The notes below the pieces were generated by a model that was given only the letters and a program-made list of their open reading frames with translations, was not told the DNA's origin and made no database searches. The position numbers were made by a program, and so were the translations under genes. Shown here piece after piece: positions 32,658 through 59,375 of a DNA stretch of 64,000 nucleotides. The DNA lies in IMG/VR virus record IMGVR_UViG_3300031951_021456, positions 124,001 to 188,000 of that record; one strand, written 5' to 3'. Numbering within the stretch: position 1 is the stretch's first letter; every line of letters begins with the position of its first letter.

Positions 32658-32714
32658 ATCTTAACACACCTTTTGGTGGTTGAGCTGTTTTGGGTGCGGT
32701 TCTTAAAGTGTCTG
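32658..32714 (-). promoter_or_regulatory. Dyad-motif promoter D (CAGACACTTTAAGAACCGCACC-N29-TAAGAT)
   Basis: Degenerate copy of the motif at 54080, 56726 and 59353 with similar spacing to an extended -10 (TGt TAAGAT). Confidence 0.5.
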
Positions 32715-32838
32715 TTTTATTTTGCTTTGGTTTCTATGTGGTGTGGATTCAAATCATTTCCAAGTAATTGAGATAATTTTAGAGTTTTTGAGATAATGCG
32801 AGTCTTATTGGAAGGTTTTAATAAAATCCACTGTAACG

Positions 32839-32845
32839 CTAAATA
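32839..32845 (+). promoter_or_regulatory. Late promoter box CTAAATA
   Basis: Upstream of gp17 ATG. Confidence 0.5.
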
Positions 32846-32872
32846 AACACAAAGACACAACGGAAACATATT

Positions 32873-35515
32873 ATGTCAGACAAACACTATCTTGGGAATC
32901 CACTATTAAAAAAAACGAACACTAATATAGAGATAACTGAAGAGCAATTAATTGAACTTGGAAAATGTTCAATGGACCCGAATTATTTTGCAAGAAATTA
33001 TATGCAAATTGTAACCTTAGATAAGGGTCTACAGAATTTTGATATGTATCCATTTCAAGAAAAGATGTTAGAGTCTTTCCATAAGAATCGCTTTAATATA
33101 GCACTTCTACCGCGCCAAATGGGTAAGCCATTATTTATTCAAACTCCAATACCAATCCCGGATGGATGGTCTACAATTAAAGAGATAGAAGTTGGAGATA
33201 GTGTATTGGCTCCATCTGGTAAAGAGGTTAAAGTTGTTTCAAAAACTGAAACAATGTATAATAGAGATTGTTATAAAATTCATTTTGATACTGGTGAAGA
33301 AATTATTGCAGATTATGACCACCCATGGGAAGTGAATTGTAGTTATTGGTCTGCGGGTAAGAGAGTGGCAACAACCAAAGAAATCTTTGATATTTACAAA
33401 ACAAGAAAGCCTAATATTAGAGGTGGTGGAGTACAAGGACCGATATACATAGAAAAAAGTAATCCCGTAGAATTTTCCAAAAAAGATTTAAAAATTGAAC
33501 CTTATACTTTAGGTTTATGGTTGGGAGATGGTCATTCTAGGTGGGGAGTTATAACTGCTCATAAAGATGATTACGACTTTTATAAGACTAGAATGGAAGT
33601 TGAACTAGAATGTCCGATTGATAATAGCATCATTTTTAAAGTTAAAAATTTACATACAAAATTAAAGGTCGCTAAACTTCTCAATAATAAACACATCCCG
33701 CAAGAGTATTTACGGTCAACCTTTGACGATAGGCTAAAACTTCTACGTGGATTAATGGATTCTGATGGATCATTAACTAAAAATTCAAGATCTTTTGAAT
33801 TTTATCAAAAGAATTATTCATTGATCAAACAAGTTGCAGAACTTTTAGCTTCTTTGGGAATTAAATCTAGAATAAGAGATAAAATTATTAATGAAGAAAC
33901 CTACTACACTCTTTCATTTACTACAACTGAAATTGTTTTTGCTCTTCCCCGAAAAACTGCTTATATTGATTTAAACAAAAGGACGAGAAAAAATGAGGAG
34001 AGACATTATATTCATCATATTGAAAAGGTTGATAGTGTGCCTGTCGCTTGTATTCAAATTAACAGCGAAGAGCATCTATTTTTATGTGGAAAATCTTTTA
34101 TTCCCACGCATAATTCAACAACTGTAGTTTCTTATCTTTTATATTATGCCATTTTTAATGAGAATGTAACTATTGCTATTCTAGCAAATAAGGCAAAAAC
34201 TGCTATAGGTATTCTCAATAGGTTACAAACAGGTTATGAAAATCTACCAAAATGGATGCAGCAAGGTATTAAAAGTTGGAATAAAGGTTCATTAGAACTT
34301 GAAAATGGCTCAAAAATTGTAGCAAACTCAACTTCAGCGACGGCTGTGCGCGGAGATTCATATAATATCATCTTTCTAGATGAATATGCTTTCGTGCCTA
34401 GTCATTTGGCCGATAGCTTTATGAACTCTGTTTTCCCTACAATTACATCAGGAAAAGAATCAAAAATTATTATCGTTAGTACACCATGGGGTATGAATCA
34501 TTTCTATAAATTATGGAACGATTCTATAAAAGGATTGAGTGGTTATGCACCAATACGAGTATATTGGAATGAACATCCAAATAGAGATGAAAAATACAAA
34601 AAGGAAATTATTAGTAAAATTGGCCAAAATGCCTGGGATGCAGAATATGAATGCCAATTCCTAGGCTCATCCGACACACTCATAAGTGGTCAGAAACTTG
34701 GAAATCTCGTAATAGAAGAACCATTAAAAAGCCGAGATCTCTTAGATGTTTATGAAGATCCACAACCAGATAAAGTCTATGTAATAACGGTTGATGTCGC
34801 AGAAGGTGTTGAATTAGACTATTCCGTTTTTGTTGTATTTGATGTTTCCCAAATTCCATATAAAGTTGTTGCAAAATATAGAAATAATGATATTCCAAGT
34901 TTAAGATTTCCAGATGTCATTGAGCCTGTAGGAAGACATTATAATGATGCATACATTTTATGTGAAGTAAATGGAGAGGGGTGTCAGGTTGCTAATATTC
35001 TGCATCTTGAATTAGATTATCCAAATATGCTTCAAACTAAAACACTAGGACGAGGTGGCCAGGTAGCTGGTCAAAATTTCTCTGGAAAGGGGGTTAAATA
35101 TGGAATTAAGATGTCTAAGCCAGTTAAAAAGAATGGATGCCTTAATTTAAAAACTCTTATTGAAGAGGATAAACTAATCTTTAATGATAACGAAATAATT
35201 GATGAACTTACCACATTCGTTTCCAAATATAATAGCTATAGTGCTGAGGAGGGTAAGAATGACGATTTGGCTATGTGTTTGGTTTTATTATCTTGGCTAT
35301 GCACTCAAGATTATTTTAAAGAAATTACTGAAACTGATATTCGCAAAAAAATAAGAGAAGAGCATGAGAAAGAATTAGAAGATAATGACACAACACCTTT
35401 TGGGTTTATTTCAACCGTTGATAACTCAAATACTGAAGTTGATTCAGAAGGAAACATTTGGTTTGCTACGGATAATGAGGAAGATTTTTCTTATTTTTGG
35501 AACTATAACTTTTAA
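32873..35515 (+). CDS. gp17: Terminase large subunit gp17, intein-containing
   Basis: YLGNPLLKK; Walker A RQMGK|STT split by intein; Walker B IIFLDEYAF; nuclease ITVDVAEG and DDLAMCL. Confidence 0.95.
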   Translation: MSDKHYLGNPLLKKTNTNIEITEEQLIELGKCSMDPNYFARNYMQIVTLDKGLQNFDMYPFQEKMLESFHKNRFNIALLPRQMGKPLFIQTPIPIPDGWSTIKEIEVGDSVLAPSGKEVKVVSKTETMYNRDCYKIHFDTGEEIIADYDHPWEVNCSYWSAGKRVATTKEIFDIYKTRKPNIRGGGVQGPIYIEKSNPVEFSKKDLKIEPYTLGLWLGDGHSRWGVITAHKDDYDFYKTRMEVELECPIDNSIIFKVKNLHTKLKVAKLLNNKHIPQEYLRSTFDDRLKLLRGLMDSDGSLTKNSRSFEFYQKNYSLIKQVAELLASLGIKSRIRDKIINEETYYTLSFTTTEIVFALPRKTAYIDLNKRTRKNEERHYIHHIEKVDSVPVACIQINSEEHLFLCGKSFIPTHNSTTVVSYLLYYAIFNENVTIAILANKAKTAIGILNRLQTGYENLPKWMQQGIKSWNKGSLELENGSKIVANSTSATAVRGDSYNIIFLDEYAFVPSHLADSFMNSVFPTITSGKESKIIIVSTPWGMNHFYKLWNDSIKGLSGYAPIRVYWNEHPNRDEKYKKEIISKIGQNAWDAEYECQFLGSSDTLISGQKLGNLVIEEPLKSRDLLDVYEDPQPDKVYVITVDVAEGVELDYSVFVVFDVSQIPYKVVAKYRNNDIPSLRFPDVIEPVGRHYNDAYILCEVNGEGCQVANILHLELDYPNMLQTKTLGRGGQVAGQNFSGKGVKYGIKMSKPVKKNGCLNLKTLIEEDKLIFNDNEIIDELTTFVSKYNSYSAEEGKNDDLAMCLVLLSWLCTQDYFKEITETDIRKKIREEHEKELEDNDTTPFGFISTVDNSNTEVDSEGNIWFATDNEEDFSYFWNYNF
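33128..34114 (+). mobile_element. Class 3 intein (329 aa) with LAGLIDADG homing endonuclease
   Basis: Starts PLFIQTPIPIPDG (Pro1); block B ADYDHPW; LGLWLGDG and LRGLMDSDG; block F VACIQI; ends PTHN before Ser. Confidence 0.9.
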
Positions 35516-35527
35516 AAGCCCAATTTA

Positions 35528-35534
35528 ATAAATA
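35528..35534 (+). promoter_or_regulatory. Late promoter box ATAAATA
   Basis: Upstream of gp18. Confidence 0.6.
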
Positions 35535-35564
35535 CTATTAAGACTTATTGAATATAGGCATAAA

Positions 35565-37730
35565 ATGGCAACTCCACAATTATCTCCTGGTTATATTATT
35601 AGGGAAGTAGACCAAACTCTTGGTCGGGTTGATAATGTTATTGATAATATTGGAGCAATTGCCGGTCCATTTAATATTGGACCAGTAGAAGAAGCTGTAA
35701 CTATTAAAAGTGAGCAAGACCTTCTCAATGTTTTTGGTAAACCTCAAGATGCTGATTCTCAGTATGAATACTGGCTTTCTGCATCTTCATTTCTATCCTA
35801 TGGTGGCACATTAAATGTCATTCGGTGTGATGGAAGTAATCTGGTCAATGCAAACTCCAAGCATGATGCAGTTGGGGTTTCAAGTGTTGGTGAGGCTACT
35901 TTAAAAATCAAAAATTTCAATGATTATAATTTAAATCATACCAGTGATGCTAAGAATTATATCTTTGCAGCAAAAACTCCAGGACAATGGGCAAATAGCC
36001 TTAAAGTGGCTCTAATTGATGATAAGGCAGATCAAATTCTTACGGTTGGTGTTGCTGCTACTTCTGGAGTTATTGGTCTTGGTGTTACTACACCTCTAGT
36101 CAATCAGCCTGCTGCGGGGATTGGAACTACTTCAGTTTTTAATGGCTATTTAAAAGCAATTGTTACTGGTGTAGGTAATAGCACAATTGATGTTAAAATC
36201 ACATCTGTTGTTAGTTCTAGTAATGTTGAAACTCCAGTAACATACGCTGAAGGATCTCAACTTCGTTCCTTTCTCACTAACAATGTAGTATCCATTATCA
36301 ATTCTAGTGGTGTTGGTGTTGCTACAACCACATTAACCACTTCAAAAGATTGGTATAATGAACAGATTATTCCTTTAGCTAATAGTACGATTTATTGGAA
36401 ATCTATTGCAGCTAAGCCCGTTACCAATGAATATGTATTAGACAGAAATGGTAAAAATGATGCAATTCATATTGTAGTTGTTGATGATACTGGCACTATT
36501 ACTGGAATTCAAGGTAATATTTTAGAAAAACATTTAAATCTATCCAAGGCTAGTGATACTCGTTCAACTGTTAATGCACCTTTAAATATTTTCTGGAAAG
36601 ATTATATTGCGGAGTATTCTAATTATCTCTATGTTGGTGACAATCCATCTGATAATAGCAATAATGAAACAGTTTATGCAACGGGGTTCAGTAATGCTTT
36701 TACTGCTATTACTAATAGTTCAGGTCTTTGGAATCTCCCAGCTCAAAATAAAACATTCAGTGCAATTGGAAGCTCGGTTTTTTCACTTTTAGGTGGAAAG
36801 GATTATAATGCTGATGGAGGTATGTTACCAACACTTGCGAATATCGTTTCAGCTTATCAACTTTTCTTAAACCAGGATCGTTATCCATTAGATTATCTTA
36901 TTATGGGTCCTGGTTATGTTAATAAGATTGATTCTCAAGCAAAAGCTAATCAATTGATTAGCCTCGCTGAACAACGCAAAGATTGTATTGCAACGGTTTC
37001 ACCACACCGTTCAGATGTTGTGGGAATTACTGATAGTGAAATTCAAACAACTAAAGTTATTGAATTCTTTTCAACCCTTTCTAGTAGCTCTTATGCGGTT
37101 TTTGATTCTGGTTACAAATATGTCTTTGACCGTTTCAATAACCGTTATAGATATATTCCTTGCAATGCAGATGTTGCTGGATTGATGGTCAGAACGAACA
37201 TTAACTCTTTCCCGTGGAACTCTCCGGCAGGACAAGAGCGTGGTGTTCTTAATGGGGCTATCAATTTGGCATATAGTCCAGATAAAACACAAAGAGATCG
37301 TCTATATCCTGCTAGAATTAATGCAATTGTGAATTTCCCCGGTTTTGGGCCAACAATGTGGGGTGATAAAACTGCTCTTGGTAGATCCTCCGATTTTGAT
37401 AGAATTAATGTTAGACGTTTATTCTTAACCGTTCAACAAGCTATTGAATCTACAGCAAATTCAATTATTTTCCAAAATAATACTGAAGCAACTCGCTTAA
37501 ACTTTATTAATATTGTTGAACCTTATCTCAGAGACATTTTAAATAAGGGCGGGTTATATGATTTTAAAGTAATATGTGATACCACTAATAATACTTCTGA
37601 TATTATAAGTAATAATGAATTCCGAGCTGACATTTACCTTAAGCCAGTTAAGTCTATTAATTATGTTACACTTACGTTTGTTGCTACACGAAACGGTGTT
37701 AGTTTTGAAGAAGTGATTGGTAGGGTTTGA
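35565..37730 (+). CDS. gp18: Tail sheath protein gp18
   Basis: LSPGYIIREVD, PWNSPAGQERG, DRINVRRLFL, PVKSINYVTLTFVATRNGVSFEEV. Confidence 0.95.
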   Translation: MATPQLSPGYIIREVDQTLGRVDNVIDNIGAIAGPFNIGPVEEAVTIKSEQDLLNVFGKPQDADSQYEYWLSASSFLSYGGTLNVIRCDGSNLVNANSKHDAVGVSSVGEATLKIKNFNDYNLNHTSDAKNYIFAAKTPGQWANSLKVALIDDKADQILTVGVAATSGVIGLGVTTPLVNQPAAGIGTTSVFNGYLKAIVTGVGNSTIDVKITSVVSSSNVETPVTYAEGSQLRSFLTNNVVSIINSSGVGVATTTLTTSKDWYNEQIIPLANSTIYWKSIAAKPVTNEYVLDRNGKNDAIHIVVVDDTGTITGIQGNILEKHLNLSKASDTRSTVNAPLNIFWKDYIAEYSNYLYVGDNPSDNSNNETVYATGFSNAFTAITNSSGLWNLPAQNKTFSAIGSSVFSLLGGKDYNADGGMLPTLANIVSAYQLFLNQDRYPLDYLIMGPGYVNKIDSQAKANQLISLAEQRKDCIATVSPHRSDVVGITDSEIQTTKVIEFFSTLSSSSYAVFDSGYKYVFDRFNNRYRYIPCNADVAGLMVRTNINSFPWNSPAGQERGVLNGAINLAYSPDKTQRDRLYPARINAIVNFPGFGPTMWGDKTALGRSSDFDRINVRRLFLTVQQAIESTANSIIFQNNTEATRLNFINIVEPYLRDILNKGGLYDFKVICDTTNNTSDIISNNEFRADIYLKPVKSINYVTLTFVATRNGVSFEEVIGRV

Positions 37731-37768
37731 TTATTATTTCAATTATAAAACGGAGGTTTTAAAGTAAA

Positions 37769-38395
37769 ATGGCATCATTAAAAACAATCACAGGGTTTAA
37801 GAGTAAATTGGCTGGTGGAGGTGCTCGGTCAAACCTATTTGAAGTGAGTATTCCAGCATTTCCCAGCATTGTAACAGGTTGGGATAATGAAACCTTTGAA
37901 TTTATGTGTAAGGGTGCTCCAATTCCTGCTGCCATTACTCCTCCAGTTGATGTGGCTTTTAGAGGTAGAACCTTAAAAGTTCCTGGGGACAGGCAATTTG
38001 ATCCTTGGACTATTACCGTGATCAATGACGAAAATCTTAAAATTCGTACAGCTTTTGAGCGTTGGTCAAATGCAATTAACCGTTTAGATACTGGAACTGG
38101 TGTTACAAATCCTGAAGCATATATGGCTGCTGTTGGTTATGTGTATCAATATGGACGCGGAGCTGATACTGGGATTGAATCTTCTACAATATCAAATGCA
38201 ACTAATAACACTTCAATAAGGCCCATTAGAACCTATGTTATTCATAACATCTGGCCAAGTAATGTTAGTGCTATTGATCTTAACTGGGATTCTGTTGATC
38301 AAATTCAAAACTTTACCGTTGAGTTTCAAATGACTCACTGGACTGCTGGAGATGCTAATGGAGTTTCTGATATTGTGAGTGCTCCAATTAATTAA
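37769..38395 (+). CDS. gp19: Tail tube protein gp19
   Basis: GGGARSNLFEV, FRGRTLKVPGDRQFDPWTITVIND, IWPSNVSAIDLNWD. Confidence 0.95.
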   Translation: MASLKTITGFKSKLAGGGARSNLFEVSIPAFPSIVTGWDNETFEFMCKGAPIPAAITPPVDVAFRGRTLKVPGDRQFDPWTITVINDENLKIRTAFERWSNAINRLDTGTGVTNPEAYMAAVGYVYQYGRGADTGIESSTISNATNNTSIRPIRTYVIHNIWPSNVSAIDLNWDSVDQIQNFTVEFQMTHWTAGDANGVSDIVSAPIN

Positions 38396-38396
38396 T

Positions 38397-38403
38397 CTAA
38401 ATA
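38397..38403 (+). promoter_or_regulatory. Late promoter box CTAAATA
   Basis: Upstream of gp20. Confidence 0.5.
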
Positions 38404-38430
38404 GGTCAAAAGTAAGAGAATATTTTATTA

Positions 38431-40143
38431 ATGGCCAAATTATTTGGATTTTCTATTGAGGATAATGGTAAATTATCTAAATCTATTGTTTCACCAGTTC
38501 CACCAAACAATGATGATGGTTCAGATCATTATTTAACTACTGGTTTTTTTGGTTCTTATGTAGACATTGAAGGTGTCTATAGAACTGAATTTGATTTGAT
38601 TCGTAGATATAGAGAAATGTCACTTCATCAAGAAGTTGATGATGCCATTGAAGATATTGTAAATGAAGCAATTGTTTCTGACACAAATGATTCCCCAATT
38701 GAGATTGAACTTTCAAATCTTAATGCTAGTGATGGAATTAAAGAAGTAATTCGTAAAGAATTTAAAACGATTCTTGAGATGTTAGATTTTGATAGTAAAT
38801 GCCATGAGATCTTCAGGAATTGGTATATTGATGGAAGATTACATTACCACAAACTAATTGATCTTAAAGATCCCCATGCGGGTATTCAAGATATTCGCTA
38901 TATTGATTCAATGAAGATTAGGTTTGTTAGACACACTAAAAAGCAGAATAAAAATAACACGTTATCTAAGATTTATGGCGAAGAAAATGTAAATGAACAA
39001 ATTTTTCCAGAATTGGAAGAATATTTTGTCTATAACCCAAAGCAGACCTATCCAGTAGGAGCAGTAGATATGTCTGCTGGTTCTGAAAAGGGAATAAAAT
39101 TCACAAAAGACTCTATTGCTTATTGTACTTCTGGACTCGTTGATAGAAATAAAGGAACTGTTCTTTCTTGGATGAATAAAGCAATTAAACCTCTCAATCA
39201 ACTTAGAATGATTGAGGATAGTATTGTCATTTATCGTCTCAGTAGAAGCTCAGAAAAAAGAATTTTTTATATTGATGTTGGCAATATGCCAAAACCAAAA
39301 GCTGAGCAATTTCTTCGTGAAACTATGATGCGGTATCGCACCAAATTAAACTATAATAGCATTACAGGTGAAGTTGATAATTCTAGACGCTTTATGAGTC
39401 TTATGGAAGATTATTGGTTGCCTCGTAGAGAAGGTGGAAGAGGAACTGAAGTTACTACTCTTCCGGCGGGCAATAATCTCGGTGAATTAGCTGATTTAGA
39501 TTACTTCAAAAGAAACCTTTATAAATCACTAAATGTACCTGAAACTCGTATTGGCGGAGATAGTGGGTTCAACTTAGGTAGATCTACCGAAATATTAAGA
39601 GATGAAGTAAAATTTACAAAATTTGTAGGACGGCTGCGTAAGAGATTTTCTCGCTTATTTTTAGATCTTTTAGGAACACAATTAATCTTAAAAAACATTG
39701 TAACTCCAGAAGACTGGAAAAGAATGTCTGAGCATATTCAGTTTGATTTTCTATACGATAACCATTTTGCTGAACTTAAAGAATCTGAATTATTTACAGA
39801 CCGCTTAAATATGGTCTCAATGGCTCAACCATATGTTGGTAAATATTTTTCACAGGATTACCTCCGTAGAAAAATTTTACGGCAAACAGATGAAGAAATT
39901 ATTGAACAAGATAAGATAATTGAAAGCGAAATTGAAAATGGAGTTATCCCAGATCCAAATACTCCAATTGATCCACAAACTGGACAACCAATTTTAGATG
40001 TTGCTCCAGAAGAAATGCCACCACCTGAAGCTACACAAGCCACATCTGCAGTTGATAACATTAAAGGAGAATCTGGTAAAGTTCCAGTAACTCCAGATAT
40101 AAAGATTAAAGAGCCTAAAATGCCCAAAGGTGGTGAAATCTAA
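38431..40143 (+). CDS. gp20: Portal protein gp20
   Basis: WYIDGR, NQLRMIEDSIVIYR, FYIDVGNMPK, EDYWLPRREGGRGTEVTTLP. Confidence 0.96.
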   Translation: MAKLFGFSIEDNGKLSKSIVSPVPPNNDDGSDHYLTTGFFGSYVDIEGVYRTEFDLIRRYREMSLHQEVDDAIEDIVNEAIVSDTNDSPIEIELSNLNASDGIKEVIRKEFKTILEMLDFDSKCHEIFRNWYIDGRLHYHKLIDLKDPHAGIQDIRYIDSMKIRFVRHTKKQNKNNTLSKIYGEENVNEQIFPELEEYFVYNPKQTYPVGAVDMSAGSEKGIKFTKDSIAYCTSGLVDRNKGTVLSWMNKAIKPLNQLRMIEDSIVIYRLSRSSEKRIFYIDVGNMPKPKAEQFLRETMMRYRTKLNYNSITGEVDNSRRFMSLMEDYWLPRREGGRGTEVTTLPAGNNLGELADLDYFKRNLYKSLNVPETRIGGDSGFNLGRSTEILRDEVKFTKFVGRLRKRFSRLFLDLLGTQLILKNIVTPEDWKRMSEHIQFDFLYDNHFAELKESELFTDRLNMVSMAQPYVGKYFSQDYLRRKILRQTDEEIIEQDKIIESEIENGVIPDPNTPIDPQTGQPILDVAPEEMPPPEATQATSAVDNIKGESGKVPVTPDIKIKEPKMPKGGEI

Positions 40144-40167
40144 ATAGACTTAGTTAATTAACAACAA

Positions 40168-42580: not shown

Positions 42581-42581
42581 A

Positions 42582-48901: not shown

Positions 48902-48927
48902 AGAGGGCATCAAAAGCCCTCTTTTTT
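48902..48927 (+). terminator. Intrinsic terminator after gp23
   Basis: AGAGGGC-atcaaaa-GCCCTCT followed by a T run. Confidence 0.85.
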
Positions 48928-49711
48928 ATTGGCTTTCAACTTTTCTACATTTGTATCCTTTATGGTGATTCCTTCTCCCAGCAGCTACAGAATACATTTT
49001 AGATCTACTAATATTTTTAGTAATACAGTATTCTGATAAATTTATCACAAATTCTTCAGTACCTTCTGGCGTTATAACTATCCATTCTTTTTGTTTGGAC
49101 TCAATATTTTTTCTTAATATATCCTCTTGCAAATTATATTCTCTAAGTTTTTGTTTTGTTTCTTCTTTAACATATCTACCCCTAGCTTTTTCTCTAATTT
49201 TTTGTCTATGCTCTTCAGTTTTTGGTTTACCTCTATTAGCTTCACTTATTAATCTTTTTGATTTTTCTGAATGCTTTTTACCAGTATTTAATTTTGAAAG
49301 TTTACGTTTAGTTTCTTCACTATGTTTTTTACCATAAAACCCATTTCGTTCCCCAAGCATCCTTTCAGGTCTATTAGCAATAAAAATATTAAGAAGAGTT
49401 CCACCTTCATCAAATCCAATTCTACCATATTTAATAATTTCTTGTTCTTCAAGATTATAGGCATCCTCTTCCCTTAAATCTACACTTATTTTAATAACCA
49501 TGGGTTCAATACCAGATGCTCTAAGATTTTTAATATGTCCTGTTAATCTTTTATTTTTGGTATAGCCAGCAGCAGGAGTTAAATGTTGAAAACATCTTGG
49601 TCCTTTACCTTTACCTACATAAAAAGGTGTTCCTTTTATAGGATTAATAATATGATAGACATAATAAACTGGGCATTCATCGTAATTATTTTCTTTTTCT
49701 TTTTTAAACAT
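48926..49711 (-). CDS. Free-standing GIY-YIG homing endonuclease with NUMOD3 repeats
   Basis: YYVYHIINP...FYVGKG...R...E...LLN catalytic module; repeats GKKHSEETKRKLS, GKKHSEKSKRLIS, KPKTEEHRQKI. Confidence 0.85.
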   Translation of the reverse strand: MFKKEKENNYDECPVYYVYHIINPIKGTPFYVGKGKGPRCFQHLTPAAGYTKNKRLTGHIKNLRASGIEPMVIKISVDLREEDAYNLEEQEIIKYGRIGFDEGGTLLNIFIANRPERMLGERNGFYGKKHSEETKRKLSKLNTGKKHSEKSKRLISEANRGKPKTEEHRQKIREKARGRYVKEETKQKLREYNLQEDILRKNIESKQKEWIVITPEGTEEFVINLSEYCITKNISRSKMYSVAAGRRNHHKGYKCRKVESQ

Positions 49712-50806: not shown

Positions 50807-50890
50807 TGTTTGAACTATAAAAGCTTTAAGTTCTTCCATTTAGTTTTAAATGTGAAACACATTACCCTTTACCCAATAGCCATTTCTTCA

Positions 50891-51988: not shown

Positions 51989-52039
51989 TTGATGATTAGT
52001 TGTAATAATTTTTAATGTTCGGGGTTAATTGCTTGCTCA

Positions 52040-52354: not shown

Positions 52355-52382
52355 TTTAATCTCCTTGTTTTAATAATGTTGA

Positions 52383-52652: not shown

Positions 52653-53149
52653 AGTTTTGGTAAGTTAATGGCGTAATGTGGTAACATGTATTTATAAATG
52701 TCTGGATATTTTTCAACCCTTTCATAATTTGAATATATTAAGCTATAATCTGTCGCATTGCGGCTTGAGGTGATCAGCCAACATTTTCCATCGTTATCAC
52801 ACCATCCAGGTCGTTTCCAGGGATTTTCATTTACATGAACTGGATGAATATTACTTGCAGAATTTTCAGAAAGTCTTTTTATTAATTGAGCAGACTTTTT
52901 AAGATTATCAAATACTTCTCTTTCTGGACATGGAATAATAGTTTTATGTTTACCATCAGGATAAGGATATGGGGTCGCAGCATCAGCATGAAGCTCTAAC
53001 CAGGCTATAGTTTCTTTTGGAGAACCACTAAAAAAATCTATGGCATCTCTAAGGATGTCAATAAGTGCATCGGTTTTTGTGAAATCTTCATTCACTCTTT
53101 CTAGCCTCTCAGAAATAAAGGCAGAAAGTTCAGCATCGGATGGTTTCAT
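52649..53149 (-). CDS. Hypothetical protein
   Basis: ORF track; ATGA overlaps at both ends. Confidence 0.6.
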   Translation of the reverse strand: MKPSDAELSAFISERLERVNEDFTKTDALIDILRDAIDFFSGSPKETIAWLELHADAATPYPYPDGKHKTIIPCPEREVFDNLKKSAQLIKRLSENSASNIHPVHVNENPWKRPGWCDNDGKCWLITSSRNATDYSLIYSNYERVEKYPDIYKYMLPHYAINLPKL

Positions 53150-53424
53150 TTCATGTCATCGTAATAGAGAGTCTTTGTGCGATTGCATATATTGCAAGAA
53201 TAATACACGCAATAAAAATCCGAACCAGTTTCAAACATGTTCGGGCATTCCCATGATTGTTGTTCAGTGGTACATTTGTTAGAATTGGCGTCTTTCATCA
53301 CTGGCTGGGCAGGATGGTGGTATATGTAAGAAAGAACCTCTTTCCAAGCCTCACCTACGGGTGTACTTTCATCGGTAAAGCCAGAAACCGATTCAATTAC
53401 ATCAATGGCATCTTGAATGTTCAT
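53146..53424 (-). CDS. Hypothetical protein with Cys-rich C-terminus (possible Zn ribbon)
   Basis: WECP...FYCVYYSCNIC. Confidence 0.55.
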   Translation of the reverse strand: MNIQDAIDVIESVSGFTDESTPVGEAWKEVLSYIYHHPAQPVMKDANSNKCTTEQQSWECPNMFETGSDFYCVYYSCNICNRTKTLYYDDMK

Positions 53425-54020
53425 TTAATTTTTCCTTGATTATTAGGCTTCGGGAGCCTATCACGCACTTGACGTAGATCAACATATCCTCGGTTATCAA
53501 TTGGTGCAGATAAAAACTGAGCCCGGTTTACTTGATTGCCAACATAAGGCTGAGATAAGCGACGGATCTCATTAAGTGCTGACGATTCATCCGCAAATCC
53601 AATCAAACCACCACCATGAGAAATCATTGCAATACGTTCTAAGATGGTTTTGCTATCATCAATAACATCTTCTGGAGTATTGTTATTGGAACCATAATAA
53701 CCTTGAGAATTGCTACACATCACCTTTCTCCTTCCTTGGCATTCATAGATTTTCTCTGCTCCATTTTTCAAGTTATATTCTCTTTCTTCTTCATCATAGA
53801 ATATGCCATCTCCTTCAGTTTCACTTTCATAAACTCTTTCACTAGACCACCCGTTAGGATCATAATAACAATCAACTATAAAGATGCCATGCCCAAGTCG
53901 CATCCAACCACAAAGATTAACCCCATCATAAACACTATATTGTTCAGGACATGCATAAGAATTTCTTTCTAATGTAAGTCCACAATAAGAATATTCATTT
54001 TTTCCTTGATCATTAGCCAT
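53421..54020 (-). CDS. Hypothetical protein
   Basis: ACPEQYSVY...GWMRLGHG motif; start revised to ATG 54020, downstream of the TATAAT. Confidence 0.6.
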   Translation of the reverse strand: MANDQGKNEYSYCGLTLERNSYACPEQYSVYDGVNLCGWMRLGHGIFIVDCYYDPNGWSSERVYESETEGDGIFYDEEEREYNLKNGAEKIYECQGRRKVMCSNSQGYYGSNNNTPEDVIDDSKTILERIAMISHGGGLIGFADESSALNEIRRLSQPYVGNQVNRAQFLSAPIDNRGYVDLRQVRDRLPKPNNQGKIK

Positions 54021-54044
54021 AGTGGATTTATGTGGTTCAATACG

Positions 54045-54102
54045 ATTATAGGTCACTGGTTCAGCCTAGGGAAAGGACTTGTGCCAGTTTTTAAAATGTC
54101 TC
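54045..54102 (-). promoter_or_regulatory. Dyad-motif promoter A (GAGACATTTTAAAAACTGGCACA-N29-TATAAT)
   Basis: Counted directly: 29 nt between motif and consensus -10. Confidence 0.7.
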
Positions 54103-54286
54103 TTAAATCATCACAGGAGTAACCACAATTCTTACATTTATAAACATTAATAACCTCTATATTTTTATAATTAACTGGAGAGATATAACGAGATAAATAT
54201 TCTTCAATGGGATCAATTGCGTTTCCAAGGTCAATATCTCCAGCACATTCTGGACAGTAGTAATTTTTCATTAATTTAATCTTCAA
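54053..54286 (-). CDS. Small Zn-ribbon protein
   Basis: CPEC...CKNC pairs. Confidence 0.6.
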   Translation of the reverse strand: MKIKLMKNYYCPECAGDIDLGNAIDPIEEYLSRYISPVNYKNIEVINVYKCKNCGYSCDDLRDILKTGTSPFPRLNQ

Positions 54287-54367
54287 GTAAAATAAAGTTT
54301 TTCAAATTGTTCTGAACATAAACTTAAAACAATCAAACAAATTAAGATAACTATAGTTCTTAAAAAC

Positions 54368-54637
54368 TTAAACATATCCATTCTCTTTTAAGTAATCTTC
54401 TTCTAAATCGTTTAAATAATTATCAAAAGGCTCCTTACATTTAGTGGAAGCATATAACATATTGTTCATTTTATACCAGCCCAAATTTAGGATATACCAA
54501 AATGTTGCATTATATCCATCATAATATACTAAACCTTCTGGATCACTCTCAAGACCCCATTTTATAGTTTCAACTGGACATTCCATATGATTTTTCCAAT
54601 AATCAAAAATCATTTTAGTTAAATTAATTTTATTCAT
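54368..54637 (-). CDS. Hypothetical protein
   Basis: ORF track; ATGA overlap. Confidence 0.6.
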   Translation of the reverse strand: MNKINLTKMIFDYWKNHMECPVETIKWGLESDPEGLVYYDGYNATFWYILNLGWYKMNNMLYASTKCKEPFDNYLNDLEEDYLKENGYV

Positions 54638-54990
54638 AGTTTTAAAAATAAAGGAAGAAAGTTCAATGTCTCAAGTTTATGTGAGCCGATGAGATCAAAG
54701 GTTGCATAAGCTTCAGCAAAAGTACAAGTAGCTGTAACAGATTTATCTACATATAGATGGCTTATAGTATCTCTAGCAGCTTTCCAAGAAAGAGCTTTTT
54801 GTGAACCGTCGTGGGATGCATGATAGCTCATAAAAATTGTTTTACACTCTTCAACGCTCAAAGTGTCCAAATAAATCCAGAAGTTCAGAACATCTTTCCA
54901 ATTGGGACCTAGAAAATATTCAGGGTATTCTAGAGCAGTTTGGTCATCTAAATGATCTGCAAAATTTTGATGTGCTTTAGAGATTTTCAT
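54634..54990 (-). CDS. Tandem paralog 3 of PExFLGPNW family
   Basis: MKISKAHQ...FLGPNWKDVLNFWIYLDTLS...LIGSHKLE...FLPLFL. Confidence 0.85.
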   Translation of the reverse strand: MKISKAHQNFADHLDDQTALEYPEYFLGPNWKDVLNFWIYLDTLSVEECKTIFMSYHASHDGSQKALSWKAARDTISHLYVDKSVTATCTFAEAYATFDLIGSHKLETLNFLPLFLKL

Positions 54991-55379
54991 GGATTTAAAA
55001 ACAAAGGAAGAAACGTAAAGGTCTCTAGATTATGAGAACCAATGAGTTCAAGGGTTGCATATACACATGTAACTCCTACACTTGCAGGAATGCATGTAAG
55101 TGTAGGAGTTACAACCCAAGCTGCAGTTGCATATACATAATAATAACATATATTATCTCTAGCAGCTTTCCGGGTAAGACTCTTTAAGGTATCCACCCTT
55201 CCTAAAGCACAATAACGCTTACCAACTATATCAAAATCTTCGCGACTCAAAGTATCCAAATAGAGCCAGAAGTTCAAAACATCCTTCCAATTAGGTCCTA
55301 AGAAAGGTTCGGGGTATTCTAGAGCATTTTGGTTATCTAAATGATCGGCAAATATTTGATGTGCTTTAGAGATTTTCAT
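54987..55379 (-). CDS. Tandem paralog 2 of PExFLGPNW family
   Basis: Same conserved termini, different middle. Confidence 0.85.
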   Translation of the reverse strand: MKISKAHQIFADHLDNQNALEYPEPFLGPNWKDVLNFWLYLDTLSREDFDIVGKRYCALGRVDTLKSLTRKAARDNICYYYVYATAAWVVTPTLTCIPASVGVTCVYATLELIGSHNLETFTFLPLFLNP

Positions 55380-55759
55380 GGATTTAGAAACAAAGGAAGA
55401 AATGTAAAGGCCTCTAGATTATGAGAACCAATGAGTTCACTGGTTGCATGACCAGATGCATATACAGTTCCTAATTGATATGTAGAGTCAGCACGCCAAG
55501 CTTCATATGCATAATACTTACATATAGTAGCTTCAGCAGCTTCCCAAGCATTGTTTATAGCAGAAACTCTAGAATCTGCGTCTAAAGCCCAATAACGAAC
55601 ATAATTTAATCTAAAATCTTCTTCACTCAAAGTATCCAAATAAAACCAAAAGTTCAATACATTCTTCCAATTGGGTCCTAGAAAATGTTCAGGGTATTCT
55701 AGAGCGGTTTGGTCATTTAAGCGATCTGCAAATCGTTGATGTGTTTTAGAGATTTTCAT
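55376..55759 (-). CDS. Tandem paralog 1 of PExFLGPNW family
   Basis: Same conserved termini, different middle. Confidence 0.85.
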   Translation of the reverse strand: MKISKTHQRFADRLNDQTALEYPEHFLGPNWKNVLNFWFYLDTLSEEDFRLNYVRYWALDADSRVSAINNAWEAAEATICKYYAYEAWRADSTYQLGTVYASGHATSELIGSHNLEAFTFLPLFLNP

Positions 55760-55762
55760 AAT

Positions 55763-56071
55763 TTAAGACGGTTCAAATTTTTTCTTTAGCCTAAGAAATG
55801 TTTCTCTTTCTCTCTTTTCAATCATTTTATTGTTTTTAGCTAGTCTTTCGCTTTGTTCATTCTCAAATTTAATGCGGGTATCATATTCTTCGTCGGTTTC
55901 TAAGCGTAATTTAGATATTTCAAACGCATTATAATCTGAAAATCCATCAACATTGATATTCACCCAACCTTCATTAATAAGGTCTTGAATTTTATTCTGT
56001 ATATTTTGAAGTTTTCCCTCAAAAAGACATATTTCCAAAAATTTATATTCTTTAATGAGTTTTTTGGTCAT
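55763..56071 (-). CDS. Hypothetical protein
   Basis: ORF track; RLETDEEYDTR, coiled-coil end. Confidence 0.6.
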   Translation of the reverse strand: MTKKLIKEYKFLEICLFEGKLQNIQNKIQDLINEGWVNINVDGFSDYNAFEISKLRLETDEEYDTRIKFENEQSERLAKNNKMIEKRERETFLRLKKKFEPS

Positions 56072-56375
56072 TTTAGTAATGCAAATTAATAATGTCTATT
56101 ATCCTATAATTATTACATCAACCTTAGTCTCAGTGAGTCCAGCATCTTCTGCAGTTTTAGGTTTATTACACACATATACCAAATATTTTTCAAGACTATA
56201 CTCAAACACACTACCATTTTTATGAGTTGTTTTAAATACTTTTCCTGGTTCAATATCAATACTATCTGAAAGATAACTCCTAGATCCGTCATCACAAGTT
56301 TCAAGCAATAAGACTTCAGTATCACCGGCATTATCTGACTGGTTATACAGTTTATCAATTTTTTCTTTAAGATCT

Positions 56376-56669
56376 TTAAGTTTCATAATTAAGATGACTA
56401 CCATTACAATCCGCAAAAAAGTGAAAACCTATGCTAATGCCTTTAATTTTGAATTGAATAAAAAAGAGGTCATTCCAAGACACAAAAGAAAAATAAACAC
56501 TGAACCAAGGACTTCCACGATATTCAAATTCGTCAAGACAGTTAATGTAATGAAATTTAAAGAGGCATTTTTCATGGAGATAGCCTTTAGATTCTTGAAG
56601 ATGGAAAAATTCTAGATAATATGCCTTTTCATCATCAAATGAATGATTAACAATGTCAAAAATTTTCAT
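56376..56669 (-). CDS. Hypothetical aromatic-rich protein
   Basis: ORF track; first gene after promoter B. Confidence 0.55.
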   Translation of the reverse strand: MKIFDIVNHSFDDEKAYYLEFFHLQESKGYLHEKCLFKFHYINCLDEFEYRGSPWFSVYFSFVSWNDLFFIQFKIKGISIGFHFFADCNGSHLNYET

Positions 56670-56690
56670 GAGGTTTTGGTGTATTTTACA

Positions 56691-56748
56691 ATTATAGTAT
56701 ATTGAAAAGTATGATGTGAGTTCAATGTGCCAGTTTGCAAAGCTTCAC
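56691..56748 (-). promoter_or_regulatory. Dyad-motif promoter B (GTGAAGCTTTGCAAACTGGCACA-N29-TATAAT)
   Basis: 29 nt spacing to consensus -10; ATG at 56669 follows. Confidence 0.7.
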
Positions 56749-56752
56749 AAAA

Positions 56753-56965
56753 TCAATCAATTACATCAATTTCCTTAACAGCAAATTCATCATAATAATT
56801 ACTTGAAAGTTCTTTTATTGCGGTTTGTCTACTTACACCATTGTTAATCATATAATCTTCAATATAAATTCTGCGTCATTCAGAATTTAAGTTTTCAGCA
56901 TCTCTTTTAATGCGGCTTACATTGTCTGGTTTATCGTAGACATCATAAGTTAAATTTGTGTTCAT
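56753..56965 (-). pseudogene. Possible small gene interrupted by in-frame TGA (56876-56878)
   Basis: MNTNLTYDVYDKPDNVSRIKRDAENLNSE*RRIYIEDYMINNGVSRQTAIKELSSNYYDEFAVKEIDVID*. Confidence 0.35.
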
Positions 56966-56994
56966 TGTTTTAAATGATAAAGAGTTTAAAATTA

Positions 56995-57216
56995 CTAATT
57001 TTTCTTATTTGGATAGATAAAGGGCTCTCCAATTTTTTCTAGAAGTGCGCGAGCAAAACTTATTTCACCATAAACTGCACCACTTTCAAAAGTATCATCA
57101 TAATTTCCACCATCTGAATAATCAAAATAATCTCCATGAATATCATATCCATGTTCACTTTCTGCATATTTTTTGATTAGGTCAATCAAAAATTCAAGTT
57201 TCTGCTCTGTGGTCAT
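56995..57216 (-). CDS. Hypothetical protein
   Basis: ORF track; GGNYDDTFESG...GEISFAR. Confidence 0.6.
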   Translation of the reverse strand: MTTEQKLEFLIDLIKKYAESEHGYDIHGDYFDYSDGGNYDDTFESGAVYGEISFARALLEKIGEPFIYPNKKN

Positions 57217-57404
57217 TTGTAATACATCTCCTCTTCATATTTAACTAGATCATAATTTAAAATATGCCAAAATTCCCAATTCATTTCATCTGGTCCTTCC
57301 GTGAGATGATACCACCATTCCCAACGATTATCTAAACATTGTCTCCAACCGCATTGAATTTTTTCAAAGAAGTTCATTTTTCTTTTAAATTTTTTATACA
57401 TAAT

Positions 57405-57791
57405 TTACTTGATTAATTCCACAAGTTCACTAAATTTATCATAGACTGATTCTAAGCCATATGAATGTGCATCTTCATAAGCAAGTGAATAACACTGTTC
57501 TCGTTTTGGATTTTGACTGACTCCAAATTCTTCAAAAAGGTCTTCTTTAAACTCTCCTAATAGCCGATTATATTCTTCACGGTATTTTGCGGCATGTTCT
57601 TTAAGTGCATCTGAATCCACAATCTTTTGAAAAGTAAAACCTTTAGGGAATGGAACATCTTTATTGTCTTTATACTCGTTGTAGGAACCATGCCATATTG
57701 TTTTACCTTTATCATAGACATAGTAAGTTGTATAGTCGGTTGAACGAGGATAAGTGTTGGTCGTAGTTTCGTAATAGTTAAAGTCTTTCAT
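57405..57791 (-). CDS. Hypothetical protein
   Basis: ORF track; FKEDLFEEFGV...NPKRE. Confidence 0.65.
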   Translation of the reverse strand: MKDFNYYETTTNTYPRSTDYTTYYVYDKGKTIWHGSYNEYKDNKDVPFPKGFTFQKIVDSDALKEHAAKYREEYNRLLGEFKEDLFEEFGVSQNPKREQCYSLAYEDAHSYGLESVYDKFSELVELIK

Positions 57792-57967
57792 TTGTTTGTG
57801 AAGCGGTTTAAAAAATTTTCAGTTAAAGTGCCAGGCTTATAGTCTGGATCAAGATATTCTACCATACCTAAAATTGATATGGCAGTTTCAATGGCTTTAG
57901 GAATTTCATCTTTCCATTGTGTTAATGATGCTCCATCTCCACCAATAGTTTCTACAACATTAACCAT
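57788..57967 (-). CDS. Small hypothetical protein (59 aa)
   Basis: Hand translation MVNVVETIGGDGASLTQWKDEIPKAIE...NRFTNK; ATGA overlap with next gene. Confidence 0.5.
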   Translation of the reverse strand: MVNVVETIGGDGASLTQWKDEIPKAIETAISILGMVEYLDPDYKPGTLTENFLNRFTNK

Positions 57968-58875
57968 AACTTTTCACTAAATTTAGCTAGAGAAAAGTCA
58001 TTTAAAGAAACAAACTCACAAAAATTTATTTTCCCATTATCAAATTTATATACAACAACAATTGGAAATGATAATTTGAGTATTGAATTATCTAGAGCTA
58101 TATTTTCTGCACTATCATCTGGAATTTCATTTTCATATTCATCTAAGAACACTATTGCACCATTTTCTTTTATGACAGTCTCATAACAGTCATAAAACTC
58201 ATCAAATGGGATAAGACCCAAACATTTATTAATGTCGTCATCTAAACTCTCACAAGACATTTTCCATGCCCATTTTCTGTATTCTTCTAAGTTTTTAAAC
58301 AGTTTTTTCATTTTTAATTAATGTTTGAATTCCAAGTAATCACATAGCATATCTATTGATCCTTCGTTAATGATGGACCAAATTCTTTCGGCCCTTGGTT
58401 TTCCTTGACCGTTGAAGGTCCAATGATAAGGACATTCAATAAAGTTTTTTCGTCCATTTTCACGTTTTTCTGCTTCGTAAACCCAAAACCACCAGCATCT
58501 AATAGCAAAGACAAATCGCTTAAAATACCATGGCATAAGGCATAGATTATCAATTGTAGTTTCAAAGTAATAAACGAAATCATAATCCAAATATTCTAAG
58601 GACCAGTCATGTAATTGATTAAGCATTATTCCCCTCTAAAGTCTGTGCAATAGACTGATAGATTTGTGCTGAGGCTTTAAAGCATTTACGAGTATTTACA
58701 TCAGTAGTTTCATATGCATTTTTGAAATTTTCTCCGGCTCTAGAATAAAGTTCAGAAATTATTATCCAAGGCTTTTGCTCTTTTGGTACATTTTCTAGTA
58801 AAATTTGAAGATCTGTTGCAAGTTGTGGTTGCGTCATGATTTTATATTATTGTATGATGTTTTATGATAGAGCAA

Positions 58876-59292
58876 TCATAATTTGTTGTTATATAGCCAT
58901 TTACATCCCATATTTGATTGGTCAATGATTCTCCTCATATTTACAGATTTAATTCCTTCTTTCATTATGCTATGTATTTCTTTGATCACACCAGTATTAA
59001 GAGAATAAATCATATCATCAGTTTGAATAACGACTCCAGGGCAGAAATCTGTATCTCCAACATTTTCAACTTTTAAAAACTGTAAAAGGTAATCTAAGCG
59101 GCTGGTGTCCATATTAGGAATTGGCTCTATCAATAAAACTGCACATCTAGCAGCCTTCCAGCCATCAATAATTCTATCGTTGGCACATAAGCCATCTGAC
59201 AATTGTTTCAACCATTGAGACATCTCGTATCTCTCTTCTGGCGAGCCTGGTTCTGGACTTGTCCCCCAACCCTGCCATTTTTTATCATTCAT
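58876..59292 (-). CDS. Hypothetical protein
   Basis: Start revised to ATG 59292 with AAGGAG RBS, downstream of promoter C. Confidence 0.6.
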   Translation of the reverse strand: MNDKKWQGWGTSPEPGSPEERYEMSQWLKQLSDGLCANDRIIDGWKAARCAVLLIEPIPNMDTSRLDYLLQFLKVENVGDTDFCPGVVIQTDDMIYSLNTGVIKEIHSIMKEGIKSVNMRRIIDQSNMGCKWLYNNKL

Positions 59293-59316
59293 ACCAAAAT
59301 TCTCCTTGTTTTCAAC

Positions 59317-59375
59317 AGCATAAAGCAAAAGCACACTCAAAGTAAGTTGAAGTGTGCCAGTCTTTTAAGTGTCTT
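59317..59375 (-). promoter_or_regulatory. Dyad-motif promoter C (AAGACACTTAAAAGACTGGCACA-N30-TATGCT)
   Basis: 30 nt spacing; motif abuts the aspS stop codon. Confidence 0.65.

What the first reader, a model, noticed from the sequence alone, without database searches (positions are those of the whole stretch)
32658..59375. Recurrent dyad motif at fixed distance from -10 boxes: candidate phage-specific activator regulon
Seen on the minus strand: A GAGACATTTTAAAAACTGGCACA-N29-TATAAT (54045-54102); B GTGAAGCTTTGCAAACTGGCACA-N29-TATAAT (56691-56748); C AAGACACTTAAAAGACTGGCACA-N30-TATGCT (59317-59375); D CAGACACTTTAAGAACCGCACC-N29-TAAGAT (32658-32714, degenerate). All four are co-oriented with transcription, lie just upstream of a gene start, and lack a consensus TTGACA -35. 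The site is an imperfect 9-4-9 inverted repeat centred near -53. Established: the T4 MotA box sits at -30 and CRP sites at -41.5 or -61.5, so the geometry matches neither. Inference: a dimeric transcription factor, phage-encoded or borrowed from the host, activates sigma70-type promoters of the accessory gene arrays. I cannot check whether this motif has been published.
Basis: partly seen in the sequence, partly recalled or inferred. Interest (0 to 1): 0.75.

Follow-up and report, generated by a model that had tools for sequence, protein, structure and literature searches.

The report
Cyanophage early-promoter upstream dyad element
The recurring motif is real: it is a 22-bp palindrome placed about 53 bp upstream of the start of early-gene promoters in a T4-like cyanophage, an element shared by many cyanophages and apparently already reported, although the protein that reads it is still unknown.

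Summary
All four sites exist as written. They are the only window copies of a 66-copy element in this 247,932-bp T4-like phage genome (random genomes give about 2 sites). The motif is a 22-bp dyad, GTGnCAs-N8-sTGnCAC. A TAnnnT -10 hexamer starts 41-42 nt from its centre, putting the centre at about -53. There is no -35 consensus, G is enriched at +1, and the gene ATG lies about 72 nt from the centre. The same architecture occurs in Synechococcus and Prochlorococcus myoviruses (B3, Syn9, S-SSM7, P-SSM2, P-SSM4, P-HM1, P-HM2, P-TIM40) and in more than 100 uncultured viral contigs. It is absent from P-TIM68 and from T4-like phages of Stenotrophomonas, Sinorhizobium and Pelagibacter. In P-HM2, every transcription unit classed as early by published RNA-seq is headed by this dyad. 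So this is the early-promoter class of T4-like cyanophages, very probably the "novel regulatory element" reported for Syn9 in 2016; I could not read that paper. The arms do not co-vary, which favours a protein site over a hairpin. Sixty-one picocyanobacterial genomes show no enrichment, so there is no host regulon. No phage gene co-occurs with the dyad. The element is a new member of a known kind, and the factor that binds it is unidentified.

The parts
54081..54102 (-). Dyad A (GAGACATTTTAAAAACTGGCAC), PWM 25.1 bits
54045..54050 (-). -10 hexamer TATAAT of promoter A, starting 42 nt from the dyad centre; predicted +1 near 54038
53421..54020 (-). First gene behind promoter A (199 aa from the ATG at 54020; phrog_21607, function unknown)
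56727..56748 (-). Dyad B (GTGAAGCTTTGCAAACTGGCAC), PWM 15.4 bits; weak distal arm
56691..56696 (-). -10 hexamer TATAAT of promoter B (42 nt from the centre); predicted +1 near 56684
56376..56669 (-). First gene behind promoter B (97 aa ORFan). Further downstream at 54634-55759 are three tandem copies of a ~20-copy paralogous family
59354..59375 (-). Dyad C (AAGACACTTAAAAGACTGGCAC), PWM 23.2 bits; overlaps the 3' end of the AspRS gene
59317..59322 (-). -10 hexamer TATGCT of promoter C (43 nt from the centre); predicted +1 near 59310
59323..59359 (-). Hairpin GGCACACTTCAA/TTGAGTGTGC plus a T-run, lying between dyad C and its -10 and using the proximal arm. Probably the terminator of the upstream AspRS gene
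   Evidence: read from the sequence; inference
58876..59292 (-). First gene behind promoter C (138 aa ORFan from the ATG at 59292)
32693..32714 (-). Dyad D (CAGACACTTTAAGAACCGCACC), PWM 14.1 bits; degenerate proximal arm
32658..32663 (-). -10 hexamer TAAGAT of promoter D (41 nt from the centre); predicted +1 near 32651
31677..32631 (-). Leftward cassette of four small ORFs (78, 97, 72 and 54 aa) behind promoter D, wedged between rightward late structural genes

Best explanation
The motif is the upstream element of the early-promoter class of a T4-like cyanophage. Each promoter has a 22-bp dyad (GTGnCAs-N8-sTGnCAC, with a better-conserved proximal arm TGkCACA) centred at about -53. It has no conserved -35. 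It has a host-type -10 (TAnnnT, often preceded by TGn), a G at +1, and a leader of about 15-20 nt. Shown: the anatomy, the fixed spacing, the orientation towards genes, the conservation across cyanomyoviruses, and, in phage P-HM2, the association with genes measured as early. Inferred: host RNA polymerase with its primary sigma factor uses the -10. A dimeric DNA-binding protein present at the very start of infection sits on the dyad, on the same helical face as the polymerase, and recruits or stabilises it, probably through an alpha C-terminal domain. This gives phage early genes an advantage over host promoters. Because host genomes have no such sites, the protein is more likely delivered with the phage DNA, or is a host protein with no regulon of its own, than a conventional host regulator. 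Its identity is unknown.
For: There are 66 sites against about 2 expected. The -10 peaks at 41-42 nt from the centre. There is no -35, G is enriched at +1, and partial TGn is present. An ATG lies 55-100 nt away in 40 of 66 sites, against 4.9 for random positions. The same architecture is found in B3 and Syn9, S-SSM7, five Prochlorococcus phages, and 464 of 592 PWM sites in 1 Mb of IMG/VR contigs. In P-HM2, all Early (A) transcription units (PHM2_056-070, 072-074, 135, 136; S2 Table of PMC5082946) are headed by a dyad with a -10. The arms do not co-vary: 269 observed against 269 expected at positions 4/19, and 180 against 269 at positions 7/16. The interval between dyad and -10 varies in sequence while its length is fixed. 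One dyad can serve two divergent early promoters. There is no host regulon. Early genes of generalist cyanomyoviruses are transcribed even in resistant Synechococcus and Prochlorococcus strains (PMC6708340), which fits a factor that is always available.
Against: No transcription start site or binding data exist for this phage. No candidate protein was found: no gene co-occurs with the dyad. The host of this phage is unknown and the genome lacks psbA/psbD, so the host genomes I tested may not include its host. The arm centres are about 16 bp apart, on opposite helical faces, which is unusual for a simple helix-turn-helix dimer. Promoters with only a -10, or an extended -10, are common in picocyanobacteria, so an activator may not be strictly required. 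Two P-HM2 dyads head Mid (B) rather than Early genes.
Confidence: 0.6

Rival explanations
1. The dyad is an operator for a phage-encoded early protein that shuts early promoters off, or that both activates and later represses as phi29 p4 does. The promoters themselves fire unaided from their -10 or extended -10.
For: The -10 elements are good and TGn is partly present. S-SSM7 copies also have a weak TTG at about -34. Early transcripts peak at 0.5-1.5 h and then fall (PMC5082946). -10-only promoters are usual in these hosts (general knowledge).
Against: The site lies upstream of the core promoter at a strictly fixed phase, which is typical of RNAP-contacting activators. No co-occurring phage gene was found.
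Confidence: 0.17
2. A conventional host transcription factor, for example of the CRP/NtcA family, is borrowed, and the phage sites mimic a host regulon.
For: The dyad is restricted to cyanophages and missing from T4-likes of proteobacteria. Early genes need a factor present at time zero.
Against: Five genomes have 0-6 cores against 3-5 for the control. Dyad plus -10 gives 0-1 against 0-4. Sixty-one family genomes give 34 against 118 for the control. The host sites I inspected are inside ORFs or lack a -10; the only promoter-like one sits by an integrase gene. The sequence and spacing differ from CRP (TGTGA-N6-TCACA) and NtcA (GTA-N8-TAC).
Confidence: 0.1
3. Host RNA polymerase reads the element directly, as an unusual UP-like element or through a cyanobacteria-specific polymerase feature, with no separate factor.
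For: No factor was found in host or phage. The position (-64 to -42) coincides with the UP-element zone. The proximal arm is the better conserved.
Against: UP elements are A/T tracts. Here the conserved bases are G/C-containing arms with dyad symmetry, and the inner A/T is the variable part. Host promoters do not use it.
Confidence: 0.08
4. The dyad acts as DNA or RNA structure (cruciform, terminator or stabiliser hairpin), or merely marks the ends of mobile promoter cassettes as PeSL elements do, with the spacing inherited by descent.
For: At site C and a few others the proximal arm takes part in a terminator-like hairpin. A seven-copy cassette exists at genome 112-122 kb.
Against: There is no compensatory covariation in the arms. 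The most common arm pair (A at 4, G at 19) is not complementary. Outside the cassette family the interval sequence is unrelated while its length is fixed. The element is conserved across phages with 33-41% GC.
Confidence: 0.04

Closest known systems
Early-gene regulatory element of T4-like cyanophages (Doron et al. 2016, ISME J 10:1437; Syn9 and P-TIM40)
   Same: Syn9 and P-TIM40 both carry this dyad, clustered in their blocks of small ORFs. In P-HM2 it heads the measured early units. As I recall the abstract of that paper, it states that a novel element controls early genes and is abundant and conserved among T4-like cyanophages.
   Different: I could not read the paper and found no open paper that prints the motif, so identity is inferred. 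This phage and B3 use the element far more widely (about 65 copies across the genome) than Syn9 (about 10, clustered). P-TIM68 lacks it.
T4 MotA/AsiA-dependent middle promoters
   Same: A phage-specific upstream element replaces the -35 at promoters that keep a sigma70-type -10.
   Different: The MotA box is a non-palindromic 9-mer at -30 read by a monomer with sigma appropriation. Here there is a dyad at -53, nothing conserved at -30, and no MotA or AsiA hit in the genome. The class is early, not middle.
Class I activation by CRP/FNR-type dimers
   Same: A dimer on an upstream dyad, phased with the polymerase, at promoters with poor -35 elements.
   Different: The half-sites and spacing differ (6-10-6 against 5-6-5). 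The centre is at -53 rather than -61.5 or -41.5. There is no host regulon.
Phage phi29 protein p4
   Same: A phage regulator binding an upstream inverted repeat and contacting the polymerase alpha CTD; one site can act on divergent promoters.
   Different: p4 is made during infection and switches early to late. Here the class is the earliest one, and no phage protein has been identified.
T4 early promoters with upstream A-rich elements, boosted by the injected Alt protein
   Same: Early promoters carrying extra upstream information down to about -60, with help from something delivered at injection.
   Different: The T4 elements are A-tracts plus a strong -35. Alt modifies the polymerase and does not bind DNA.
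PeSL (promoter-early stem-loop) cassettes of T4-type phages (Arbiol et al. 2010)
   Same: A repeated early-promoter module flanking small variable ORFs; occasionally a hairpin adjoins the promoter (site C).
   Different: The conserved dyad here shows no covariation and is not a stem-loop.

Membership tests
Early-promoter class of T4-like cyanophages | Heads genes measured as early during infection | tested here: met
   Tested in relative P-HM2 only. All Early (A) units of PMC5082946 S2 Table are headed by the dyad plus a -10. Not measurable for this uncultured phage.
Early-promoter class of T4-like cyanophages | Conserved across T4-like cyanophages and abundant in metagenomes | tested here: met
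   Found in B3, Syn9, S-SSM7, P-SSM2, P-SSM4, P-HM1, P-HM2 and P-TIM40 and in 119 or more IMG/VR stretches, of which 97 of 119 encode homologues of this phage's proteins. Exception: P-TIM68.
Early-promoter class of T4-like cyanophages | Sequence identity with the motif printed in Doron et al. 2016 | not testable with these tools
   The paper is not held. No open paper quoting the motif was found.
Early-promoter class of T4-like cyanophages | Transcription starts mapped downstream of the element in this phage | not testable with these tools
   There are no transcript data. The only indirect support is G enrichment 7 nt after the hexamer.
T4 MotA-dependent middle promoter | MotA box (TGCTTtA-like) centred at -30 | tested here: not met
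   No information content between -40 and -18.
T4 MotA-dependent middle promoter | motA and asiA genes in the genome | tested here: inconclusive
   No PF09114 or PF09010 hit, but the searches had no positive control.
CRP/FNR/NtcA-type host activator site | 5-6-5 or 3-8-3 half-site pattern at -41.5 or -61.5 | tested here: not met
   The pattern is 6-10-6 (GTGnCA-N10-TGnCAC), centred at -52.5/-53.5.
CRP/FNR/NtcA-type host activator site | The same site is used in host genomes (a regulon) | tested here: not met
Sigma-54 promoter | TGGCAC-N5-TTGCW at -24/-12 | tested here: not met
   TGGCAC is present, but no TTGC follows 5 nt later in A-D. The start would be about 40 nt too far away.
Hairpin / cruciform promoter or terminator | The arms co-vary to keep pairing | tested here: not met
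   Complementarity is at or below chance at the variable arm positions.
N4-like virion-RNAP hairpin promoters | The genome encodes a giant virion RNA polymerase | tested here: not met
   The 3703-aa ORF has only a YHYH domain. The genome is T4-like, with gp6, gp8, sheath, gp20 and gp23.

The most novel reading that the evidence does not exclude
The dyad is read by a so-far unknown kind of time-zero factor: either a DNA-binding activator packaged in the cyanophage virion and injected with the genome, or a host protein that has no binding sites in its own genome. This factor is what lets these phages drive early genes from promoters lacking -35 elements in any Synechococcus or Prochlorococcus cell they enter. 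The roughly 65-copy, genome-wide use in this phage and in B3 would then be an expansion of that system beyond the classical early block.
Probability: 0.35. Interest if true: 0.7.

Novelty: new member of a known kind. Interest (0 to 1): 0.4.

Why it matters
T4-like cyanophages kill a large share of the ocean's main photosynthetic bacteria. They lack the MotA/AsiA system of T4, and how they start their gene programme is not mechanistically understood. This analysis gives a precise, portable definition of the early-promoter element: arms, spacing, asymmetry and possible bidirectional use. It shows which phages have the element and which lack it. It argues from 61 host genomes that no ordinary host regulon is being copied. 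That narrows the search for the missing factor and offers a simple sequence rule for predicting early genes in uncultured cyanophage genomes. For this particular window, the finding itself is an ordinary instance of that class.

Tried and rejected
1. N4-like phage with hairpin promoters. I suspected this from the 3703-aa ORF and rejected it, because the genome is T4-like.
2. T7-like single-subunit RNAP promoter. Rejected: the fixed -10 downstream and the dyad symmetry do not fit.
3. My first cross-phage pattern (GNCASTTN6AASTGNC) wrongly suggested the element was absent from Syn9, B3 and others. It was too strict on the inner TT/AA. PWM and arm-only scans corrected this.
4. An exact 5-mer dyad count failed to recover the motif and instead picked up coding repeats of a paralogous gene family.
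5. Phylogenetic profiling for a phage-encoded factor gave nothing present in B3, Syn9 and S-SSM7 and absent from P-TIM68, DLP6, phiM12 and HTVC008M. Two relaxed candidates (57 aa and 74 aa) fail on distribution. An 82-aa 'transcriptional regulator' is gp33 of the late system.
6. DLP6's paired PHIRE 'promoters' are not this dyad.
7. Six literature searches and nine papers opened or looked up did not yield the printed Syn9 motif.
8. A TATAAATA late-promoter map was uninformative: only 8 well-placed copies.
9. Host-genome sites with phage-like interiors are in ORFs or lack a -10; one is next to an integrase gene.
Full report
OBSERVATION. The four sequences are present on the minus strand exactly as written. 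In window coordinates the 22-bp dyads are 54081-54102 (A), 56727-56748 (B), 59354-59375 (C) and 32693-32714 (D). Their -10-like hexamers are at 54045-54050, 56691-56696, 59317-59322 and 32658-32663. Each is followed by an ATG about 70 nt from the dyad centre: 54020, 56669, 59292 and 32631.

WHAT GENOME THIS IS. A 3703-aa ORF first suggested an N4-like phage, but Pfam and PHROGs show a T4-like myovirus. It has gp6-like, gp8-like, sheath, gp20 portal, gp23-type capsid and large terminase genes. The window is bases 124001-188000 of a single 247,932-bp viral record with 33% GC, which CheckV rates as complete. The capsid protein is 75% identical to Synechococcus phages B3 and B23 and about 70% identical to P-TIM68, S-SCSM1, S-SM2 and S-SSM7. 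The genome has no psbA or psbD, so its host is not established. 'Cyanophage' here describes its relatives.

THE MOTIF GENOME-WIDE. A position weight matrix, iterated on the phage's own genome, finds 121 strand-hits, equal to 66 sites. Twenty random genomes with the same dinucleotide make-up give a mean of 3.4 and a maximum of 8 strand-hits. Nearly every site scores on both strands, so the element is a palindrome with consensus tGTGaCAsTTTwwAAAsTGkCACa. A -10-like hexamer begins 41 or 42 nt from the dyad centre in 45 site-directions, against 3-4 at other offsets. On the side that has the -10, 41 of 66 sites have a co-oriented ATG within 110 nt. Forty of 66 centres have an ATG 55-100 nt away, against a mean of 4.9 and a maximum of 12 for random positions. 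The median distance is 72.5 nt. Aligned on the hexamer, there is no information between -40 and -18, so there is no -35 and no MotA box.

CONSERVATION. My first cross-genome test used a pattern that fixed the inner TT/AA, and it wrongly reported near-absence in Syn9, B3 and others. The PWM and an arm-only score (GTGNCAS-N8-STGNCAC, 12 scored positions) corrected this. At 11 or more of 12 positions, the counts are as follows, with the number having a -10 at 41-44 in brackets:
- this phage: 15 dyads (13)
- B3: 16 (16)
- Syn9: 4 (3)
- S-SSM7: 12 (12)
- DLP6: 0
- phiM12: 0
- HTVC008M: 1 (0)
- P-TIM68: 0
Random genomes give 0.2-2.4. The same pattern with up to one mismatch gives 11, 6, 11, 9 and 8 in P-SSM2, P-SSM4, P-HM1, P-HM2 and P-TIM40, against 0-1 for the reversed control. 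By PWM, B3 has about 65 sites and Syn9 about 10. In most phages the sites cluster in one block of small ORFs: Syn9 at 43-53 kb, S-SSM7 at 41.8-51.8 kb, P-TIM40 at 50.3-55 kb and P-SSM2 at 44.6-68 kb. This phage and B3 spread them over most of the non-structural genome. In that 1.0 Mb there are 592 PWM sites, 464 with a -10-like hexamer at 41-43 nt. Of the 119 stretches, 97 encode homologues of this phage's proteins. P-TIM68's upstream regions are instead enriched in -35-like words such as TGACAA. S-SSM7 shows the cleanest copies: dyad, weak TTG near -34, TATAAT at 42 nt, and a conserved leader.

TEMPORAL CLASS. Thompson et al. 2016 (PMC5082946, S2 Table) clustered P-HM2 genes by RNA-seq. Early (A) in the light comprises PHM2_056-070, 072-074, 135 and 136. 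The P-HM2 dyads map as follows:
- 37627, leftward: PHM2_060 and onward to 056
- 39293, both directions: PHM2_064 onward to 061, and PHM2_066/067
- 39760, rightward: PHM2_068-074
- 125043, rightward: PHM2_135
- 127351, rightward: cobS (PHM2_136)
At cobS the hexamer at 43 nt is only CATTAT, and a clean TATAAT follows a few nt later. So every early transcription unit is headed by the dyad. Two further dyads head Mid (B) genes (PHM2_053 and PHM2_189). The element therefore marks the earliest promoter class. This is the strongest functional evidence available here, and it comes from a relative, not from this phage. The genes behind A-D are ORFans, as early genes typically are.

PROTEIN SITE OR STRUCTURE. 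Across 586 distinct dyads, complementarity at the free arm position 4/19 equals chance: 269 observed and 269 expected. At position 7/16 it is below chance: 180 against 269. The commonest combination, A at position 4 and G at position 19, cannot pair. The conserved letters are therefore read as sequence, which points to a protein. Oriented by the -10, the invariant core is symmetric: G-9 C-7 A-6 mirrored by T+6 G+7 C+9. The proximal arm continues as CACA at 79-95% conservation, while the mirror positions of the distal arm reach only 56-59%. The interval between dyad and -10 varies in sequence but not in length. That argues for a spacing constraint rather than copying of a cassette. The exception is a seven-copy cassette at genome 112-122 kb, whose spacing is 44.

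WHOSE PROTEIN. Early transcription needs a factor that exists at time zero.
- Host regulon test. The dyad core occurs 0-6 times in five complete or near-complete Synechococcus and Cyanobium genomes, against 3-5 for the reversed control. The core plus TANNNT at the right gap, with one mismatch allowed, gives 0-1 against 0-4. In 61 genomes of the family (about 150 Mb) there are 34 perfect cores against 118 control hits. That is about 0.2 per Mb, against 20-43 per Mb in the phages.
- Host sites inspected. They lie within ORFs or lack a -10. The one promoter-like site is directly upstream of a phage-integrase-family gene.
- Phage factor test. No protein of this phage is shared with B3, Syn9 and S-SSM7 and absent from the four dyad-negative phages. 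Two relaxed candidates fail on distribution. The one 'transcriptional regulator' hit is gp33 of the late system.
- Outcome. The factor is unidentified. A conventional borrowed host regulator is disfavoured. An injected protein, a fast-evolving phage protein, or a host protein without a regulon all remain possible.
- Related observation. Early genes of generalist cyanomyoviruses are transcribed even in resistant strains of both host genera (PMC6708340).

COMPARISON WITH WHAT IS KNOWN. The element is not any of the following:
- a MotA box (position, symmetry and class all differ; no MotA or AsiA hits, though those searches lacked a positive control)
- a CRP, FNR or NtcA site (half-sites, spacing, position, and no regulon)
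- a sigma-54 promoter (no -12 element)
- a hairpin promoter
From my memory of its abstract, Doron et al. 2016 reported that a novel regulatory element controls early genes in Syn9 and P-TIM40 and is abundant and conserved among T4-like cyanophages. Both of those phages carry this dyad in their small-ORF blocks. I could not open that paper, and no open paper prints the motif, so the identification is probable rather than verified. In function, the nearest analogues are class I activators and phi29 p4.

VERDICT. The element is a new member of a known kind, the cyanomyovirus early-promoter class. Interest is moderate. It rests mainly on the still-unknown reader of the dyad and on the unusually wide use of the element in this phage and in B3.

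Noticed in passing
window 54634-55759 (-), plus about 17 other copies in the genome (e.g. genome 7.8-9.3 kb, 32-33 kb, 82-90 kb, 207-212 kb): A roughly 20-copy paralogous family of small ORFs (about 120-130 aa) sharing a highly conserved DNA segment (GAATACCCTGAACG..TCTAGGACC..TGGATACTTTG). Three tandem copies lie in the window. There is no Pfam or PHROG match.
   Followed up: partly
window 59374-61263 (-): A full-length bacterial-type aspartyl-tRNA synthetase (629 aa; class II core, OB anticodon-binding domain and GAD domain) encoded by the phage. Its 3' end overlaps dyad C.
   Followed up: partly
window 59323-59359 (-); similar at genome 190142, 192224, 79196 and 80755: A terminator-like hairpin plus T-run lies between the dyad and the -10, with the proximal dyad arm (GGCACAC) forming one side of the stem. 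The upstream gene's terminator and the next promoter overlap.
   Followed up: no
window 6387-17498 (+): A 3703-aa ORF between gp6-like and gp8-like baseplate genes, with only a YHYH domain recognisable. Next to it is a 1653-aa DUF4815 protein (19070-24031).
   Followed up: no
window 48926-49711 (-): A homing-endonuclease-like ORF (phrog_314, HNH) on the opposite strand, immediately after the major capsid gene.
   Followed up: no
own genome 112.2-122.6 kb (just left of the window): Seven copies of a promoter cassette of about 100 bp. It has a conserved upstream stretch, a near-perfect dyad GTGACACTTTAAGAACTGGCACA, a conserved spacer, and TAGGAT/TATGAT at 44 nt instead of 41-42.
   Followed up: partly
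whole genome G000: There is no psbA or psbD in a genome rated complete and related to cyanomyoviruses. IMG/VR labels the record 'provirus', although its gene content is that of a lytic T4-like phage.
   Followed up: partly
L303 (host genome G021:C1:114042): This is the only promoter-like copy of the dyad found in about 150 Mb of picocyanobacterial DNA (TAAATT at 42 nt). It sits directly upstream of a phage-integrase-family gene, so it lies in a mobile element.
   Followed up: partly
L299 (P-HM2 39293-39314): One dyad has good -10 hexamers 43 nt away on both sides and lies between divergent early genes PHM2_064 and PHM2_065/066. A single dyad may serve two promoters.
   Followed up: partly
B3 genome (L135-L147): A different 25-40-copy repeat (CTGCAGGTATAGCGACCTTTGCAACTAC and variants) is strongly over-represented in phage B3. 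Its nature is unknown.
   Followed up: no
P-TIM68 (W04): This is the only T4-like cyanophage examined that lacks the dyad. Its upstream regions show -35-like TTGACA words instead. It could serve as a natural comparison for finding the factor.
   Followed up: partly
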